From NCBI GenBank assembly GCA_023334545.1, contig JAADVB010000032.1, positions 1-64,000 on the forward strand: a stretch of DNA of 64,000 nucleotides, given 5' to 3'. The translations under genes and the position numbers were made by a program. Each line of letters opens with the position of its first letter. Position 1 is the stretch's first letter. Of the stretch, positions 1 through 6,541 are shown in pieces. This DNA comes from Salisapilia sapeloensis CBS 127946. Taxonomy: Eukaryota > Protista > Oomycota. The notes below the pieces were generated by a model, which did no database searches, had not been told where the DNA came from, and worked only from the letters and a program-made list of their open reading frames with translations.

Positions 1-3000
1 ACTTTTTCACGTCCTCTGTAGATGCCGTAGCAAGCGTTCCTTCCTGCACTTGCGTCATCAACTGCTGCACTGGTTTCGGACCAAGCACCTTTTCCCAGAA
101 CTGTTCGTCGTTAAAGTCGATCGTCGTATCCGACGATTCGGCCGTGAAGCTCGCTTTCGAGAACGACAGCGCGTTGCTCGGGTGTGCCGGGACGTCACCT
201 GCCTCTCGATTATCCTCCACTGTCGTCCCACCCGTCGGATCGTACCGAATGGTTCGACTAGACGACAGCAAGTGGTCGATATCGAGCTCATTAATGGCTT
301 TATTCTCCGGATCGTGCTCGTCCTCTTCGCCCATGATCGCGTAGGCACCATACCGGATCATCATCTCGACCTTATCTCGATCGAGCGACATGAGACTGAG
401 CATATCTCCCCCGCCGTCTTCTCCATCAAACTCATTTCGGACACCTCCCGTTTCAAACACGGCTTGATGCATCCCAAGCTTCTTACTCGCAATGTCAAAC
501 ATCTGCGCCTCATACGTCTTCTTCGTCACGAGACGATAGATGTTCACACTCTGTGTCTGTCCGATACGGTGGCAGCGAGCAACGGCCTGGAGATCATTCT
601 GAGGATTCCAGTCGCTATCAAACAGGATGACGACACTAGCAGACACTAAGTTGATACCGACACCACCGGCGCGAGTACTCAAGAGGAAGGCAAAGGTGCT
701 AGAAGATGGGTTATTGAACCTATCGATCGCCGCCTGCCGCGCGTTGCCACGGATACTACCGTCCATACGCTCTACGTCGTATCGTCGAAGTTGACACAAG
801 TCTTCAATGAGGTCGAGCATGATTTTGAATTGAGAAAAGATCAGGACCTTCTTTCCCTCGGCTTTGAACTTGGCCAGGATCTTGTCCAGCAAGACCGTCT
901 TGCCACTCGCTTGGATGAGACTGACACTACGTTGGACGTCGCTAAGTCCAGCACACTCCTTCTCTTCCACGCCTCGAATGAGGAACGGATGGTTACAGCA
1001 TTTACGCAGCTCCATCTCGACATTCACGAGACTCGCCATGGTCCCTGCCGAGCCCATGCTCAAGAAGCTCCGATTGCGTTCGAAGATCGCTCGGTAATAC
1101 TTTTTCTGCATCGTAGTGAGCTCCACATCGACAATCGTCTCTTCCTTGGGCGGAATGCTCTTCTCCACATCTTCCTTGACGCGTCGAAGCATATACGGAC
1201 GCAATTGTTCATGCAGCTGCGCAACTTGCTCTGCCGACGTCAAGTCGCCATATTCATCGTAAAACTGCTGCTGATTTGGGAACTTGTCTGGTTCAATAAA
1301 GTTCAAAAGACACCAGAGTTCATACACGCCATTCTGCAGTGGTGTGCCAGTCATGAGGAGACATGCATCCCACGAGAATTGGCGAAGACTTTGTAAGAGC
1401 TTGGCCTCTCGGTTCTTGAGCTTATGGGCTTCATCAATGACAACGTATCGCCAGTGGATACAATCGAGGAACTCTTGATCCGCGACGAGCGTCTGGTATG
1501 ATGTAATGAGGACATTGAACTTGAAGATATTCCGACGACGATACCCTTCATGCGCATACTCGAACTCGTGCTGACGAATGAACGCTCGAGCGTCCGCACC
1601 TCCTTCCGAGTCATGATACACGACGCAATTCATCGTCGTCCACGTCTCAATCTCTCGCTTCCAATTCCCCAACGTCACGAGTGGTGCGACCACTAGGAAC
1701 GGACCTCGAATGTGCTCTCTCGTACGCAAATGTTCCATCAATGCCGTCGCCTGGACTGTCTTCCCGAGTCCCATCTCATCCGCCAAGATACAGTTACGAC
1801 GGTTGTACCAGCAAAAGACAAGCCAGTTGAGACCTTCTAGCTGGTAGCTACGCAGCTCATTCTGATTGTAGTACGTCGGAGACTCTTGGTACTTGGCCCA
1901 AGACGTCGGGTCTGGACGCACATCTTGGAAGGTGGATGGAGGAGCGCCTTCCAGGATCGGAGGATGGTTGTTACGATGGTACGCGGCGATCTTCCGGTCG
2001 TCCGTCAGCTCATCTGCCCACTCCCACGTGCTCTCCATGTAGCTCAAGTCGCGCCACTTGACCAGGTACTTGTTTCCTCTCTTAAGCACAGGCTGGAGAC
2101 CAGGACCAGCTCCGTGGTTGTTGTACGGATTCACAACGGCAGGCTCCTCCACCTCCTTCATAGCGAGGATACGATCGACTTCGCAGTACGCTTCGTTCAC
2201 GAACGTAGTGACGTCTTCAGGACCGGAACCTTCGATGATATGGCGCTTGGCGACTTCCACCTCTCGAGACTGCTTCTGCATGTATCGACGTAGACGCATG
2301 ACCGTGTGGTGTCCGAAGCGTTCAAGCTCATGCACTGGCAGCCACGTCACGTGCAGATACGACACCTCCTTCCACTTAATGAGGAACTCCATGACAGCTT
2401 CGTCGTCGTCCTGTCCAAGTTCCTTGCGGTATCTCACGCCGAGGATCTTATCCACTTGCGGTCCCTCCTTCTTCTCCGGTTTCTTCTCTACCTTCTTCTC
2501 TTCATCCGACAAATCCAAGTCGGATGCCGGCGGATCTTCCACATAACTCTTGCGCTGCTTCCCGACGTTCCGTCCAGACCGTCGCGTCGGCTGAGCCTGT
2601 GTGTTTGGCATCCCAGGCGCAAAGTCTTCGTCACTCGAGTTATCTCCGTCATCATCATCCGAGTTCTTCCGTTTCTTCCCTCGCTTCCCCTTGCGTTTCA
2701 CAGGCTTAAGCGGCGGAGCTTCAGCGGAAAACTTCTTCCGCTTCGCTTTCTGAACGTCCGAAACACCTGGCTGGAGATTCGCTCGTGCCTGGTTCTTCAA
2801 CGCACGTGCTAGCAAGTCGTTCGGGATCATACCTCCCGTCGATGTGAATTTAAATACCATAATTTGGGCACGTAATTGTTCCTTCTGTTCGTTCGAAAAG
2901 TTTGCGCGTTGTGTACGTCGAGCAGGAGGTGTCTGAGACGGCATGCCAGCACGATTCATAAAGCGAATCGCAGCGTTGCCGTACGTTTGCATGAGAAAAC

Positions 3001-4568
3001 GATTGTACGCTACGGCTGCCTCGCGTTCCGACGAAAAGATACCGAGACGACGGATACCTCCGCCGTCGACATGCAGCTCTGCAGCCCACTTCCCCAGAGA
3101 CAAGTAGCGGACACCAGTGTTCCACATACCAGCAGTTGTCACTCGAGGGTTATCCAGCCCTGCCACCGACGTACCGTGACCGTGGCGATAGTCTCGCGCT
3201 TCGTCCGAGTTCAGCGCTTCGTCCAATCCGACTGCATTCGGACGACGAAAACGAAGGAGGACTGGACGTAATGACTTGAGTCTCGACACGACGCGCTGGA
3301 AGTCTTCCTGATTACGCACTTGGAAGCCATCGACGGCAACGAGATCGTCGCCGACACGGATTAAACGACTGGCTTCTGCCGGTCCGATGACATTTGCCTC
3401 CGGTCGTCGGAACCCAGTGACGCACACAGCGTTCTGACCTACGCTCATGTTCATGCATAGACCGATGCTACCTTTCTGAAGCAACACTTCGTACTCGTCA
3501 CCTCCGGAAGGAGAAGCACGCCAGCCCATGGCTCGACAAGGCGTCTGCATGCACGAGCGCAAGGCATCGACTGCGAGTGCAGACGCTTGGGAAGGTGATG
3601 CGACGCGTCTGGCGTACGCTTGCAGACGATTGCTCACGGTCGGATCCCACGTGTACACCTCAGAGCCCATGTGGTTCATGAGCTGAGGCGTGAGCGCTCC
3701 TGCTGGAAACGGCGGCGTCGATGCCGTTGACTGCGGACTCGGATTCTGATTCTATAAGTATAACGCATAAGTGATCAAGTCGAAACTGTAGGCATGAGGT
3801 GTAGAATACCTGCTGAGCAAGGAGCGGGTTGGAATCTTGTGGTGCCGAGATGGCAGGCGCTTCCGAGGCAGGAGGTTGGGTCCAGGATGCAGCAGAAAGT
3901 CCAGAGCCACTGCGCTCCCACTGCTTTTCAAAAGACGCGTCGATGCTCGTCGGCTGTTCGTTCACCGGATTGTAAAAGGAGGAGGATCCGGTCGGGTGCT
4001 GGAACATCCGAGACGTTGGTACTGCCATCTTCTTCCCGTCTTCGTTCTCACTCTTTTCTACACCTTTCGGTTCATCTTGCTCACTCTCTTGTTTCTCAGG
4101 CTTCATATCTTCATTGTGGAAGCGCGGATCGTCTTGCAATGGACGAATGGGCGTCGGAGATGGAGATAGAAATTGAGGCGTCTTGTACGTCAGAGGCGCT
4201 GGTTGGCCCGGGTTTTCTTCCTTCGGGCCGTCATGATCGGATCCTGGCAAGTCCATATCATCTTCTACTTCCGGGAGTTGGTCGTTGATACTGCTGTTGC
4301 TCTCCACGTCGGCGTTCGTGTCTTGCAAAGGCGATTGGCCGTCTTGGTGATCGACGTCATTGGCGGACAAGGGTGCGTCCCCCATGTCCGTTTCATTCAG
4401 GGGGTTACCTGCGTTGGAACTGCCGACATCTGAATGGCCATTTCCATTTTCCGTCGCCTCTTCCTGACCAGCAGTAGGCTTGGGCTCGTCGTCACTTGGC
4501 TCATTTTTCCCGTCGCGGGGAGATGGGTCCTGACCCGCCTCCCCAAATTGAGTCGGGTGTTCGGCCAT
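1..4568 (-). CDS. CHD7: CHD6-9/Kismet-type chromodomain-helicase-DNA-binding remodeler, 3'-truncated at the window edge; order: acidic N-terminus, PDZ, AP2, QLQ, 2 chromodomains, SNF2 ATPase, helicase C
   Basis: ATG 4568; 58-nt GT-AG intron 3809-3752; exon 2 read in one frame over long stretches and spot-checked down to position 1 (missing from the ORF track, probably because it has no stop in the window). Manual translation gives chromodomains (VDKILGVRY...MEFLIKWKEVSYLHVTW; KYLVKWRDLSYMESTWE), NCILADEMGLGKT, VVIDEAH, VLIFSQF, LLSTRAGGVGINL and FDSDWNPQNDLQAVARCHRIGQ...YRLVTKKTYEAQMFDIASKKLG, which matches the CHD6-9 pattern. Symbol marks the subfamily, not one-to-one orthology. Confidence 0.92.
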
Positions 4569-5396
4569 GATAAATTTGATGAAAATGCACCTAGCAAACT
4601 ATAGATGGGCAACTCGCCGTCTTAACGCTGCGGAGGATGATGAACCTTCCGCGTTCTGCGGCGTCCCGTTCTTTGCTTGCTCACAAAACTTGGAGGTATA
4701 CTTTATCCTTGTGTAACGAATAGGTTGCGCGAATGTTGTGCAATGCGGAAGGTTGAGAGAACACGTGGGCCAGTTTATAAGTGCCGACGATTGCATAAGG
4801 TTTTATACATAAGTGATGTAGCTTTTTAGAAACGGACGAGAACGTGGGGTTGGATGACCATGACGGTTATGATGGGTATTGATGTCGACTTGCTGCAGGC
4901 AAAAAGTGTTGCGTTGCATGAGACGGATGGTGTCTGTTTCGCTGGTATGACTAATGGGCGGAAGATTATACGGAATTTTGAATGAGACGTTTGTCAGCGG
5001 AGAGTGCCAGTTGGCCCACCCGATGCTGAAGCGATTCTGAGTGGATTATACCGCTCTTGAAGCGAACACAGGTATGTATCTGATGCCGCGTGTCACGTAC
5101 ATATCATACAAAAGATACTATTGCCTGACGTTATCCTGTTTGCCCCATATCAAGCTACGTATACCTCTCATGTTGCTACAATCATCGAGACGACGCACCT
5201 CTTCACATGACAAATCGACACGATTGTGACTGAGAAAAAGACAACAAGGACCGTCGGCTGACTATGCAACCCATCTGCACAGACCCATCTTCGTACCATC
5301 AACATATTCTCAGACAAATCCACTTCCATGACACCACTAAGGAAGAAAAATGAATCGGAAGATCGAACAAAAGAATTTGAAATTATAGAGCCCGAT

Positions 5397-6541
5397 CTAC
5401 GCTTTCGACACCGCATCCTTGTACTGTGGCTTTAACTCGTAGCAGCTCTTATTCGGGCCCTTGCGATGGTACACGCAAATCTCTTTCAGAACTTCCTTCA
5501 AGAAGGACTATACCAAGACGTTAGCACGTAGGTAGGACACCAAGTAAGACATGACGTACCTCTGGTTGGCGGCAATGGGCGTTGAGCTCCTTGAGTGGCC
5601 AGAACTCGCGCTCTTCGAAGCGCTCAAAGACCATGTTCTTCAGTTCGTCCTTGCTGATCTTGATCTTCTTATCTATACGATCCATGCTCTTCATGTCCGA
5701 TTTCTCCTGCACATTTCTTTCAGTTCATGCTGTTCTACTTGTAACAAAGCAAAGGACGAACCTCTTCAGCTTCTGGATCAGGCTTATCAATTGTAAACTG
5801 CACTTTGGCTCGTTTGACACGAGGTAAATCTTCCAGCGGCTGCGTTTCTCTATTGAATACGATTAGAAGCGATCGAATGGCTTGCATGGTAACCATGTAC
5901 CTTGGACGTGTCATAGATTTGATCAAACGCTGACGACAGTATTTGCTGTATTGGTCATTGTTCTGCGCCAGGATGGAGCAGCTGTTCTTGACGGTGCCTT
6001 CAATTGCCATGCGACCAGAGCCATCAAGACTGAAGAGCTTGAGCTTTAACGGCGTCTCAGTCATTTCGACACGATATTCCGTCGGGATCTGGTCATCATC
6101 TAGAGATGACTGGTTGACGGTGAGTATGCCCTAGAACCAGCACGTTAGATGACATAAATACATTCTTGGGAATGTATTGCCTACTTTACGCTTTCCCAAG
6201 TAGCTTTTCTTGTTGAGCTTGATGGATCCAAGCATCAATTCGCTTTCTTAAAGTACGATAGATGTAACCGTTAGAGTGGATGAACGTAGATGGAATGGTA
6301 GGAATATGTATTACCTTGAACGTTCTTCCACGCATTACCGAGTGCTTGCTAATAACCGATCGTCAGTGTTCATGTCAGAGAGTCAGGTACTCGCAACGGT
6401 ATCACAGCGAGCGAATACAAAGCGTATGTATACACATATATGCATATTAGATACGATACTTACCGGGACTTTGGCGAGATAGACTTCTCGATCTTCCAAG
6501 TCTAACTGAAGCGGCTCGACCGTGTCTTCTTCTTGCGCCAT
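5397..6541 (-). CDS. GTF2F2: Transcription factor IIF beta subunit (RAP30), multi-exon
   Basis: Spliced: MAQEEDTVEPLQLDLEDREVYLAKVP | QALGNAWKNVQ | ESELMLGSIKLNKK... | GILTVN...IPTEYRVEM...; C-terminal winged helix KDELKNMVFERFEEREFWPLKELNAHCRQPE...LKEVLKEICVYHRKGPNKSCYELKPQYK. GT-AG introns, e.g. GTAAGT at 6463; stop TAG 5399-5397. Confidence 0.88.

What the first reader, a model, noticed from the sequence alone, without database searches (positions are those of the whole stretch)
2340..3500. CHD chromatin remodeler carrying PDZ, AP2/ERF and QLQ domains upstream of its chromodomains
Seen: hand translation of the exon missing from the ORF track gives three domains in one frame. PDZ-like, about 3496-3242 (EYEVLLQKGSIGLCMNM...VCVTGFRR...GPAEASRLIRVGDDLVAVDGFQV...FQRVVSRLKSLRPVLLRFRR). 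AP2/ERF-like, about 3118-2965 (TGVRYLSLGKWAAELHVDGGGIRRLGIFSSEREAAVAYNRFLMQTYGNAAIRFMN). QLQ, about 2899-2810 (FSNEQKEQLRAQIMVFKFTSTGGMIPNDLL). A basic NLS-like linker, two chromodomains and a CHD6-9-type ATPase follow. Established: AP2 is the sequence-specific DNA-binding domain of plant and apicomplexan transcription factors; QLQ is typical of SNF2/BRM remodelers and GRFs rather than CHDs; PDZ binds peptide C-termini. Inference: a remodeler that may target itself to DNA motifs and dock a signalling partner through PDZ. I do not know this combination from characterised CHD proteins.
Basis: partly seen in the sequence, partly recalled or inferred. Interest (0 to 1): 0.8.

Follow-up and report, generated by a model that had tools for sequence, protein, structure and literature searches.

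The report
CHD remodeler with hidden AP2 domain
An expressed oomycete chromatin-remodelling enzyme does carry a PDZ domain, a divergent plant-type AP2 DNA-binding fold and a QLQ motif ahead of its motor; PDZ and QLQ were already tabulated for this gene family, the AP2 domain was not, and the PDZ-AP2 pair is shared with brown-algal and chrysophyte remodelers.

Summary
The minus strand holds one open frame from 3751 past the window start. RNA contigs from three runs splice a 58-nt GT..AG intron (3752-3809). This joins the frame to an upstream exon (ATG 4568) in one continuous transcript assembly that runs through the ATPase.

All three N-terminal domains are real but divergent:
- PDZ: fold match to PSD-95/Dlg PDZ domains, TM 0.7-0.8.
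- AP2/ERF: family profile against AtERF1, ERF096 and WRI1 gives E 1e-12 to 3e-18. The model has three strands plus a helix, and the top structural hits are all AP2.
- QLQ: exact QX3LX2Q motif; 18 of 18 orthologs hit Pfam QLQ.

Orthologs occur across oomycetes.

Novelty is limited. A 2014 paper already lists [PDZ, QLQ]-2xChromo-SNF2-PHD for this ortholog group (PITG_10083). AP2 is not listed there, and a 2024 transcription-factor census counts only one other AP2 gene per oomycete.

New here: the same PDZ-AP2 pair sits upstream of the ATPase in Bromo-PHD-Chromo-PDZ-AP2-SNF2 proteins of Ectocarpus, Chromulina and many environmental eukaryotes.

DNA binding by the AP2 domain is inferred. Four of the seven classical ERF contact residues are changed or lost. 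The "CHD6-9 type" label is not supported by accessory domains.

The parts
4569..4722 (-). 5' untranslated region; the transcript assemblies end at 4677-4722
   Evidence: RNA contigs of X1, X2 and X4 reach 4722, 4683 and 4677
3810..4568 (-). Coding exon 1 (ATG at 4568, 253 codons): acidic, Ser/Pro-rich, low-complexity N-terminus with no Pfam hit
   Evidence: ORF 3660..4568; no Pfam family; splice junction at 3810; translation
3752..3809 (-). 58-nt GT..AG intron that joins exon 1 in frame to exon 2
   Evidence: Read from the sequence. A joint skipping 58 nt between 3751 and 3810, CT..AC on the + strand, appears in contigs of three RNA runs and in a related organism's run
1..3751 (-). Coding exon 2: an open frame of 1250 codons that runs off the window; the transcripts continue 875-1640 nt further
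3542..3634 (-). Conserved helical segment before the PDZ domain, function unknown
   Evidence: Alignment A1; helices at 2-9 and 14-27 of the model, low pLDDT; 46% mean identity
3242..3502 (-). PDZ-fold domain; the carboxylate-loop position reads K-GSI-GLCM
   Evidence: Pfam PDZ_2 at 24 bits; 18 of 18 orthologs hit it; PDB profile hits at 4e-4; Foldseek matches to PSD-95, Dlg and MAGI PDZ domains with TMt 0.7-0.8 and rmsd 2.3-2.9
2951..3127 (-). Divergent AP2/ERF-fold domain (three-stranded sheet plus a helix)
   Evidence: phmmer hits to multi-AP2 proteins, including a plant AP2/ERF protein; A2 profile against WRI1, ERF096, AtERF1 and TEM1 at E 3e-18 to 1.5e-12; AF2 model pLDDT 79.6; top 8 Foldseek hits and top 4 VIA hits are all AP2
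2810..2899 (-). QLQ motif (Q-KEQ-L-RA-Q, i.e. QX3LX2Q)
   Evidence: Pfam QLQ 23.6 against 23.8 bits in the window; 18 of 18 orthologs hit it, best 3.8e-8; PDB hits to the SMARCA4/BRG1 QLQ
2666..2749 (-). Lys/Arg-rich, NLS-like linker
   Evidence: Read from the translation; nuclear-import function is inferred
2315..2455 (-). Chromodomain 1
   Evidence: Pfam Chromo, 2 stretches, E 3.8e-16; motif positions
2003..2182 (-). Chromodomain 2
   Evidence: Pfam Chromo, best stretch residues 557-593
983..1846 (-). SNF2-family ATPase N-lobe with intact motif I (GLGKT) and motif II (DEAH)
   Evidence: Pfam SNF2-rel_dom E 1.4e-79; motifs read
560..895 (-). Helicase C-terminal lobe
   Evidence: Pfam Helicase_C E 8.3e-25

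Best explanation
This is the oomycete ortholog of the CHD-family nucleosome remodeler that the oomycete literature lists as 'chromodomain-containing protein (B)' (PITG_10083 group).

Shown:
- It is a single expressed gene with two coding exons in the window.
- The protein order is: acidic N-terminus, PDZ fold, AP2/ERF fold, QLQ, basic linker, tandem chromodomains, then an SNF2 ATPase with intact motor motifs.
- Full-length orthologs end in PHD plus extended-PHD fingers.
- The PDZ-AP2 pair is a conserved two-domain module. It also sits upstream of the ATPase in the paralogous Bromo-PHD-Chromo-PDZ-AP2-SNF2 remodelers of brown algae, a chrysophyte and many uncultured eukaryotes.

Inferred mechanism:
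- The ATPase slides or evicts nucleosomes, as in other CHD enzymes.
- The AP2 fold gives the enzyme its own DNA contact. No SANT-SLIDE or BRK hit was seen in a full-length ortholog, so AP2 may act as the DNA-binding arm. Its specificity must differ from the GCC box, because several ERF contact residues are replaced.
- QLQ recruits an SS18/GIF-type (SNH-domain) cofactor, as it does in BRG1 and the GRFs.
- The PDZ domain docks a peptide of a partner or of a histone or chromatin protein.
- The chromodomains and C-terminal PHD fingers read histone marks.
For: Gene model: continuous frame. A 58-nt GT..AG intron is spliced out in contigs of three RNA runs, and each contig spans from about 4700 to beyond position 1. 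Of 35 listed differences in a 95-99% similar organism's RNA, 33 fall on third codon positions (positions taken from the table).

Orthologs with all three blocks conserved occur in Phytophthora, Bremia, Plasmopara, Pythium, Lagenidium, Thraustotheca and Aphanomyces. Block identity is 71-82%, linker identity 40-46%.

PDZ. AP2. QLQ.

ATPase and chromodomains. C-terminal PHD and zf-HC5HC2H in the P. infestans ortholog, with no SANT, SLIDE or BRK hit.

PDZ-AP2 module upstream of SNF2 elsewhere: single co-linear phmmer alignments spanning both domains. Architectures and taxa: (Ectocarpus fasciculatus, Chromulina nebulosa).

Literature: Table 2 of PMC4030286 lists the same architecture minus AP2.
Against: - No biochemical data exist for any of the three N-terminal domains.
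- Of the seven AtERF1 DNA-contact residues (named from memory of Allen et al. 1998: R150, R152, W154, E160, R162, R170, W172), only the GVR arginine and the AAE glutamate are clearly kept. R152 and W154 are aliphatic here, R162 is His, and no Trp matches W172. The hairpin alignment differs.
- The window's AP2 block gets no Pfam hit at all, and no ortholog reaches the Pfam AP2 gathering score.
- Structural Z-scores are modest, 5.2-6.7.
- The PDZ loop is GLCM in this family, GLGM in the oomycete paralog and GLFM or GLLM in ochrophytes, so canonical C-terminal peptide binding is uncertain.
- Absence of SANT-SLIDE rests on Pfam only.
Confidence: 0.8

Rival explanations
1. The AP2 fold is real but no longer binds specific DNA sequences. 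It would act as a non-specific DNA or nucleosome anchor, or as a protein-interaction or autoregulatory surface packed against the PDZ domain. In that case the enzyme is targeted only by its histone readers and partners.
For: Four of the seven classical ERF contact residues are changed or lost (alignments). The block falls below Pfam AP2 thresholds. AP2 was dropped without replacement at that position in the oomycete and diatom paralogs, which keep the PDZ domain. The PDZ-AP2 spacing is constant, as expected for a co-folding pair.
Against: The beta-sheet face keeps Arg, Lys and His residues (GVR, GKW, H, RR). Several of these are invariant across oomycetes. ApiAP2 and other non-plant AP2 domains also bind specific DNA with different contact residues (general knowledge).
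Confidence: 0.3
2. The PDZ-AP2 module was not inherited vertically from a common stramenopile remodeler. It was acquired separately, for example by capture of an AP2 (plus NUMOD) DNA-binding cassette from a homing endonuclease or other mobile element, or by exon shuffling between the two paralogs.
For: AP2 domains occur in homing endonucleases (general knowledge). Two ochrophyte-type proteins carry a weak I-HmuI NUMOD-like hit downstream of AP2. The ATPase tree could not be rooted, so the order of events is open.
Against: Same domain order, same PDZ subfamily signature (E-x-E-V, GFR, GPAEA, LRF) and similar spacing in both paralog families. The ATPases of the two families are 50-58% identical, against 47% to a vertebrate CHD1.
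Confidence: 0.15
3. Artefact: the similarities are chance, or the N-terminal region belongs to a separate upstream gene that was fused by reading through.
For: All three Pfam scores are below threshold on the window sequence alone.
Against: There is no stop codon between the QLQ motif and the chromodomains. Spliced RNA contigs span everything. The same order occurs in more than 20 orthologs. Profile E-values reach 3e-18, and the fold matches agree.
Confidence: 0.02

Closest known systems
Oomycete 'chromodomain-containing protein (B)', reference PITG_10083 (Matari & Blair 2014, PMC4030286, Table 2)
   Same: Same ortholog group by architecture: [PDZ, QLQ], 2x Chromo, SNF2_N, Helicase_C, PHD, zf-HC5HC2H_2. 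The P. infestans ortholog P0014/P0313 shows exactly these Pfam hits.
   Different: The paper lists no AP2 and uses the gene only as a dating marker. I could not verify the locus tag directly; the match is by domain set and species.
Stramenopile Bromo-PHD-Chromo-PDZ-(AP2)-SNF2 remodelers ('chromodomain-containing protein (D)', PITG_03401; Ectocarpus fasciculatus CAN0169884.1; Chromulina nebulosa EP01035_P019284)
   Same: Same PDZ subfamily upstream of a CHD-type ATPase that is 50-58% identical. The brown-algal, chrysophyte and environmental members also have the AP2 block right after the PDZ domain.
   Different: They have Bromo-PHD and one chromodomain N-terminal to the PDZ domain, and no QLQ. 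Oomycete and diatom members lack a detectable AP2, and diatoms add an N-terminal HMG box.
Plant AP2/ERF DNA-binding domain (AtERF1 1GCC/2GCC, ERF096 5WX9, WRI1 7WQ5, TEM1 7ET4)
   Same: Same fold (three-stranded sheet plus helix), 28-34% identity, and shared G-V-R, W-x-A-E, L-G-x-F and E-x-A-A-x-A-Y-[ND] elements.
   Different: It is embedded in a remodeler, not a transcription factor. The positions of R152, W154, R162 and W172 are not conserved, and it scores below the Pfam gathering threshold.
QLQ of SWI/SNF ATPases (BRG1/SMARCA4, Snf2) and plant GRFs
   Same: QX3LX2Q motif, and a profile hit to the SMARCA4 QLQ, including the SMARCA4-SSXT chain 7VRB.
   Different: The host is a CHD-type ATPase, not a Snf2/Brm-type one. 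There is no HSA or BRK context, and the partner is unknown.
CHD1 SANT-SLIDE DNA-binding domain (a functional analogy only)
   Same: A DNA-binding module attached to a chromodomain-ATPase core, which in CHD1 senses linker DNA (general knowledge).
   Different: Different fold and a different position (N-terminal here, C-terminal in CHD1). The function here is untested.
PITG_23160 'AP2/PHD', the only AP2 gene counted in oomycete transcription-factor censuses (PMC11267843)
   Same: An oomycete protein with an AP2 domain next to a chromatin-reader domain. It bound AT-rich 8-mers on a protein-binding microarray.
   Different: A different gene with a canonical AP2 sequence and no ATPase. The CHD AP2 domain was not included in that census.

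Membership tests
CHD (chromodomain-helicase-DNA-binding) remodelers | Tandem chromodomains immediately N-terminal to an SNF2-family ATPase | tested here: met
   Pfam Chromo x2 (E 3.8e-16), SNF2-rel_dom 1.4e-79, Helicase_C 8.3e-25. The best PDB relatives are CHD1 at 9e-146 and CHD4 at 7e-144, aligned from the chromodomains through the ATPase.
CHD (chromodomain-helicase-DNA-binding) remodelers | Intact ATPase motifs (motif I GxGKT, motif II DEAH, motif VI) | tested here: met
   DEMGLGKT, VIDEAH and QAVARCHRIGQ read in the translation.
CHD6-9 subfamily | BRK domains and a SANT-SLIDE-like region C-terminal to the ATPase | tested here: not met
   No BRK, SANT or SLIDE hit in the full-length P. infestans ortholog; PHD plus zf-HC5HC2H instead. 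The 'CHD7' and 'CHD9' names are automatic. A subfamily phylogeny was not possible, because no CHD6-9 sequences were available.
AP2/ERF domain (PF00847) | Significant sequence-profile relationship to known AP2 domains | tested here: met
   Profile A2 against PDB: WRI1 3.3e-18, ERF096 1.5e-13, AtERF1 2.9e-13, TEM1 3.3e-13, with no other family below E 0.1. The window segment alone, by phmmer, hits multi-AP2 proteins whose Pfam AP2 E-values reach 1.8e-63. Caveat: Pfam's own gathering score is not reached by the window (no hit) or by any ortholog (best 2e-5).
AP2/ERF domain (PF00847) | Three-stranded antiparallel sheet packed on one helix | tested here: met
   AF2 model: strands at 17-21, 24-31 and 35-42, helix at 45-67, pLDDT 79.6. 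Foldseek ranks 1-8 are all AP2, with 1GCC at TMt 0.69 and rmsd 2.9. VIA Z is 5.2-6.7 for the top four, all AP2.
AP2/ERF domain (PF00847) | Conserved DNA-contact Arg/Trp residues and sequence-specific DNA binding | tested here: inconclusive
   The GVR arginine and the AAE glutamate are invariant. The R152, W154, R162 and W172 equivalents are replaced or absent (residue list from memory). DNA binding itself cannot be tested with these tools.
PDZ domain | PDZ fold (about 85 aa, beta-sandwich with two helices) | tested here: met
   Model segment 45-131 has pLDDT 70-89. There are 136 PDB matches at E<=1e-3, and all 50 listed are PDZ-domain entries. PSD-95 PDZ3 TMt reaches 0.80, Dlg PDZ1 TMt 0.75. 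Profile hits to PDZ chains at 4e-4. Pfam PDZ_2 hits 18 of 18 orthologs, below threshold in the window.
PDZ domain | Carboxylate-binding loop R/K-xxx-G-L-G-F and C-terminal peptide binding | tested here: inconclusive
   The loop reads K-GSI-G-L-C-M and is invariant in orthologs. The second Gly varies across paralogs: C, G, F or L. Ligand binding cannot be tested. Conserved ortholog C-termini (...HRKRS) do not look like a PDZ ligand.
QLQ domain (PF08880) | QX3LX2Q motif in a profile-matching segment of about 35 aa | tested here: met
   Q-KEQ-L-RA-Q at 2864-2887. Pfam gives 23.6 against 23.8 bits in the window; 18 of 18 orthologs hit it, best 3.8e-8. QLQ is precomputed in many orthologs. SMARCA4 QLQ hit at 7.6e-3.
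QLQ domain (PF08880) | Binding of an SNH/SSXT (SS18, GIF) partner | not testable with these tools
   No partner search was possible. A lookup in the scan's earlier notes found nothing.

The most novel reading that the evidence does not exclude
PDZ-AP2 is an ancient stramenopile self-targeting module that predates the oomycete-ochrophyte split. Its AP2 fold would give CHD-type remodelers their own sequence-specific DNA recognition, combining transcription factor and remodeler in one polypeptide and replacing the SANT-SLIDE arm of other CHDs. The invariant PDZ domain would couple that recognition to a partner peptide or a histone tail. Oomycetes would then have a second, uncounted AP2 DNA-binding protein that is a core chromatin enzyme.
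Probability: 0.3. Interest if true: 0.75.

Novelty: new variant of a known kind. Interest (0 to 1): 0.55.

Why it matters
CHD remodelers are usually brought to their sites by histone marks or by separate transcription factors. A conserved, single-copy CHD with a built-in AP2 fold would be a simple, testable case of a remodeler that can find DNA by itself.

This occurs in a group that includes major crop and animal pathogens, whose transcription-factor repertoire is small. Censuses count one AP2 gene per oomycete genome, so this domain is an overlooked addition.

The PDZ-AP2 pair recurs in brown-algal and chrysophyte remodelers. It is replaced or lost in the diatom and oomycete paralogs. This makes it a stramenopile-wide chromatin module whose function nobody has examined.

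The practical gain is modest. The protein, its PDZ domain and its QLQ motif were already tabulated, and no function has yet been shown.

Tried and rejected
- Pfam on the window sequence alone gave no AP2 hit and sub-threshold PDZ and QLQ scores, so family alignments were needed.
- Fold search with the whole N-terminal model returned only PDZ matches. The AP2 block had to be modelled separately.
- Rooting the ATPase tree failed. The only outgroup available, a turtle CHD1, sat on a very long branch and left a three-way polytomy. Whether the window's family is an oomycete-specific duplicate of the Bromo-type family is therefore unresolved.
- The CHD6-9 assignment could not be tested by phylogeny, because no CHD6-9 sequences could be obtained. 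The accessory-domain test was negative.
- Self-ligand idea (the PDZ domain binding the protein's own C-terminus): the conserved C-termini end in ...HRKRS, with no hydrophobic last residue, so the idea has no support.
- Relaxed HMM searches found no AP2 remnant in the oomycete or diatom Bromo-type paralogs.
- Literature: Iyer et al. 2008 was not held. The chromatin-evolution and brown-alga genomics preprints mention neither PDZ nor AP2 in CHDs. A search for AP2-SNF2 fusions found only cases of recruitment in trans in Plasmodium.
- The protein atlas search gave only generic CHD clusters.
- Earlier scan notes held nothing on this gene.


Full report
GENE MODEL

The minus strand translates without a stop from 3751 to the window edge, 1250 codons. 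This frame is absent from the ORF list only because ORFs that run off the source are not listed.

Upstream, an ORF starting at ATG 4568 ends its coding part at 3810. It is followed by GT...AG over 3809-3752, and splicing puts 3751 in frame.

Logan contigs from three RNA runs of one study (X1, X2, X4) each lie on 1-3751 and 3810-~4700 with exactly these 58 nt removed. They extend 875-1640 nt beyond position 1. The spliced joint shows the contigs derive from RNA. With no stop codon in between, the PDZ/AP2/QLQ region and the ATPase are on one message.

A run from a 95-99% similar organism (X5) covers the same region in shorter contigs. Of its 35 listed differences between 80 and 2504, 33 fall on third codon positions. 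This indicates purifying selection.

THE THREE N-TERMINAL DOMAINS

Pfam on the window protein gives strong hits for SNF2_N, Helicase_C and two chromodomains. It gives only sub-threshold PDZ_2 (24.0 bits against 27) and QLQ (23.6 against 23.8), and no AP2.

A word-indexed search returned 27 relatives: Phytophthora spp., Bremia, Plasmopara, Pythium, Lagenidium, Thraustotheca, Aphanomyces and some uncultured ones. In an 18-sequence alignment the three blocks stand out. Mean identity to the window is as follows:

| Segment | Peronosporalean/pythialean orthologs | Saprolegnialean orthologs |
|---|---|---|
| PDZ | 75% | 55% |
| AP2 | 71% | 43% |
| QLQ | 82% | 73% |
| Linkers between the blocks | 40-42% | 6-25% |

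Scanning each member against Pfam: QLQ 18 of 18 (best 3.8e-8), PDZ_2 18 of 18, PDZ_6 13 of 18, AP2 7 of 18 (best 2e-5).

The alignment profile against PDB sequences finds three kinds of chain, each on the expected segment:
- PDZ chains, from 4e-4.
- ERF096 (5e-4), WRI1 and AtERF1 (1e-3).
- The SMARCA4/BRG1 QLQ (7.6e-3).

An AlphaFold model of the region (pLDDT 65 overall, 70-89 in the PDZ part) matches PSD-95, Dlg, MAGI and other PDZ domains. TM is 0.7-0.8 normalised on the target and rmsd is 2.3-2.9 Å.

AP2 IN DETAIL

An exhaustive phmmer search with the 332-residue N-terminal piece against 1.8 billion cluster representatives gave 242 hits. Many are proteins with 3-8 repeats matching residues about 212-280. 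Pfam calls these AP2 with E down to 1.8e-63. One is a plant AP2/ERF-domain protein.

A 23-sequence alignment of the AP2 block includes oomycete orthologs and non-oomycete PDZ-AP2 proteins. Its profile hits only AP2/ERF chains in the PDB: WRI1 3.3e-18, ERF096 1.5e-13, AtERF1 2.9e-13, TEM1 3.3e-13, 1GCC 1.5e-12.

The model has pLDDT 79.6 and shows three strands followed by a long helix. Foldseek ranks 1-8 are all AP2 domains, with 1GCC at TMt 0.69, rmsd 2.9 and 33% identity. The top four VIA-align hits are also AP2, with Z 5.2-6.7. These Z values are modest on their own, so the sequence profile is the decisive evidence.

Shared elements are G-V-R, W-A-A-E, L-G-x-F and E-x-A-A-x-A-Y-N. I compared against the AtERF1 contact residues, which I recall from Allen et al. 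1998 and did not check here:
- The first Arg and the Glu are invariant.
- The R152 and W154 positions are aliphatic.
- R162 is His, or Lys in Saprolegniales.
- There is no Trp at W172.
- The hairpin alignment differs.

If the domain binds DNA, it will not recognise a GCC box.

QLQ AND PDZ DETAILS

The QLQ segment has the exact QX3LX2Q signature (Q-KEQ-L-RA-Q).

The PDZ carboxylate-loop position reads K-GSI-GLCM and is invariant in orthologs. In paralogs the third residue is G, F or L. Canonical C-terminal peptide binding is therefore plausible but not assured.

The conserved C-termini of orthologs (...HRKRS) do not look like a ligand for the protein's own PDZ domain.

WIDER FAMILY

Several phmmer hits align in one stretch across the PDZ domain, the linker and AP2. 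They belong to genes with the order Bromodomain, PHD, Chromo, PDZ, AP2, SNF2, Helicase_C. Prokaryote-style gene calling often splits these at introns.

A search with one such ATPase found named members:
- Ectocarpus fasciculatus (brown alga): PDZ plus AP2.
- Chromulina nebulosa (chrysophyte): PDZ plus AP2.
- Diatoms (Thalassiosira exigua, Entomoneis and others): PDZ and an N-terminal HMG box, with no detectable AP2.
- A second oomycete paralog (Pythium oligandrum, Nothophytophthora, Globisporangium): Bromo-PHD-Chromo-PDZ-SNF2 plus PHD fingers, with no AP2.

The PDZ domains of all these proteins share one signature: E-x-E-V, GFR, GPAEA, LRF.

The window's ATPase is 80-87% identical to its orthologs. 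It is 50-58% identical to the Bromo-type family and 47% to a vertebrate CHD1.

In an unrooted maximum-likelihood tree the window's family groups with the oomycete Bromo-type paralog, with support 100/98. With the single available outgroup this collapses to a polytomy. An oomycete-specific duplication and an older duplication both remain possible.

In that tree the window's sequence branches outside Phytophthora, Pythium and Lagenidium, and inside relative to Aphanomyces.

WHAT WAS ALREADY KNOWN

Matari & Blair 2014 (PMC4030286), Table 2, list two relevant rows:
[quoted passage not shown] Brackets there mean missing or non-significant in some species. The P. infestans ortholog found here has exactly the (B) set of Pfam hits. 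So PDZ and QLQ in this CHD are on record, as a table entry without discussion.

AP2 is not listed. The 2024 P. infestans protein-binding-microarray study counts one AP2 gene in most of the oomycete genomes it tabulates and tested only PITG_23160, an 'AP2/PHD' protein (PMC11267843). The chromerid genome paper reports apiAP2 genes as absent from stramenopiles (PMC4501334). I found no paper describing an AP2 domain inside a CHD or SNF2 enzyme. The library is incomplete, and Iyer et al. 2008 was not available.

MECHANISM: SHOWN AND INFERRED

Shown:
- An expressed, conserved CHD-type ATPase with intact motor motifs and tandem chromodomains.
- N-terminal PDZ, AP2 and QLQ domains.
- In orthologs, C-terminal PHD and extended-PHD fingers and no Pfam SANT, SLIDE or BRK.

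Inferred:
- The AP2 fold provides DNA contact, either sequence-specific or as a linker-DNA sensor.
- QLQ recruits an SNH/SS18-like cofactor, by analogy with BRG1-SS18 and GRF-GIF.
- The PDZ domain docks a partner peptide.
- The basic stretch acts as a nuclear localisation signal.

The main rival is that the AP2 fold has lost specific DNA binding and serves structurally together with the PDZ domain.

VERDICT

The claim that the combination is unknown is too strong for PDZ and QLQ, but it holds for AP2 as far as I could search. The 'CHD6-9' label is unsupported.

The added finding is that PDZ-AP2 is a recurring stramenopile remodeler module. This raises the interest somewhat above that of a single odd architecture.

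Noticed in passing
P0177 residues 886-921; P0215: Two ochrophyte-type or environmental Bromo-PHD-Chromo-PDZ-AP2 remodelers carry a weak Pfam I-HmuI NUMOD-like hit downstream of the AP2 block. AP2 plus NUMOD is a DNA-binding pairing typical of homing endonucleases, which hints at a mobile-element origin for the cassette.
   Followed up: no
P0241 (Thalassiosira exigua), P0302 (Pythium oligandrum); Around a constant PDZ domain the DNA-binding domain turns over. Brown-algal and chrysophyte members have AP2. Diatom members have no AP2 but an N-terminal HMG box. The oomycete Bromo-type paralog has neither.
   Followed up: partly
P0035, P0037, P0051 (Aphanomyces spp.); Saprolegnialean genomes encode separate proteins of 450-640 aa that end in a PDZ domain 41-50% identical to the CHD PDZ, closer than any other PDZ outside the orthologs. 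They have no other Pfam domain.
   Followed up: partly
window 4799-5600: RNA contigs of the neighbouring locus carry two introns with opposite strand signals in one contig: 5070-5152 (GT..AG on +) and 5508-5559 (GT..AG on -). This suggests two overlapping or convergent transcripts merged by the assembler.
   Followed up: no
window 3542-3634 (-): A helical segment of about 30 residues just before the PDZ domain (A-x-A-S-A-L-A-V-D-x-L-R) is conserved among peronosporalean and pythialean orthologs but not in Saprolegniales. It has no family match.
   Followed up: no
P0031 (Liquidambar formosana KAK9283219.1); The best named AP2 hit is a plant protein with five tandem AP2 domains. This is unusual for plants, where one or two is the norm. 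It may be a gene-model fusion or a contaminant.
   Followed up: no
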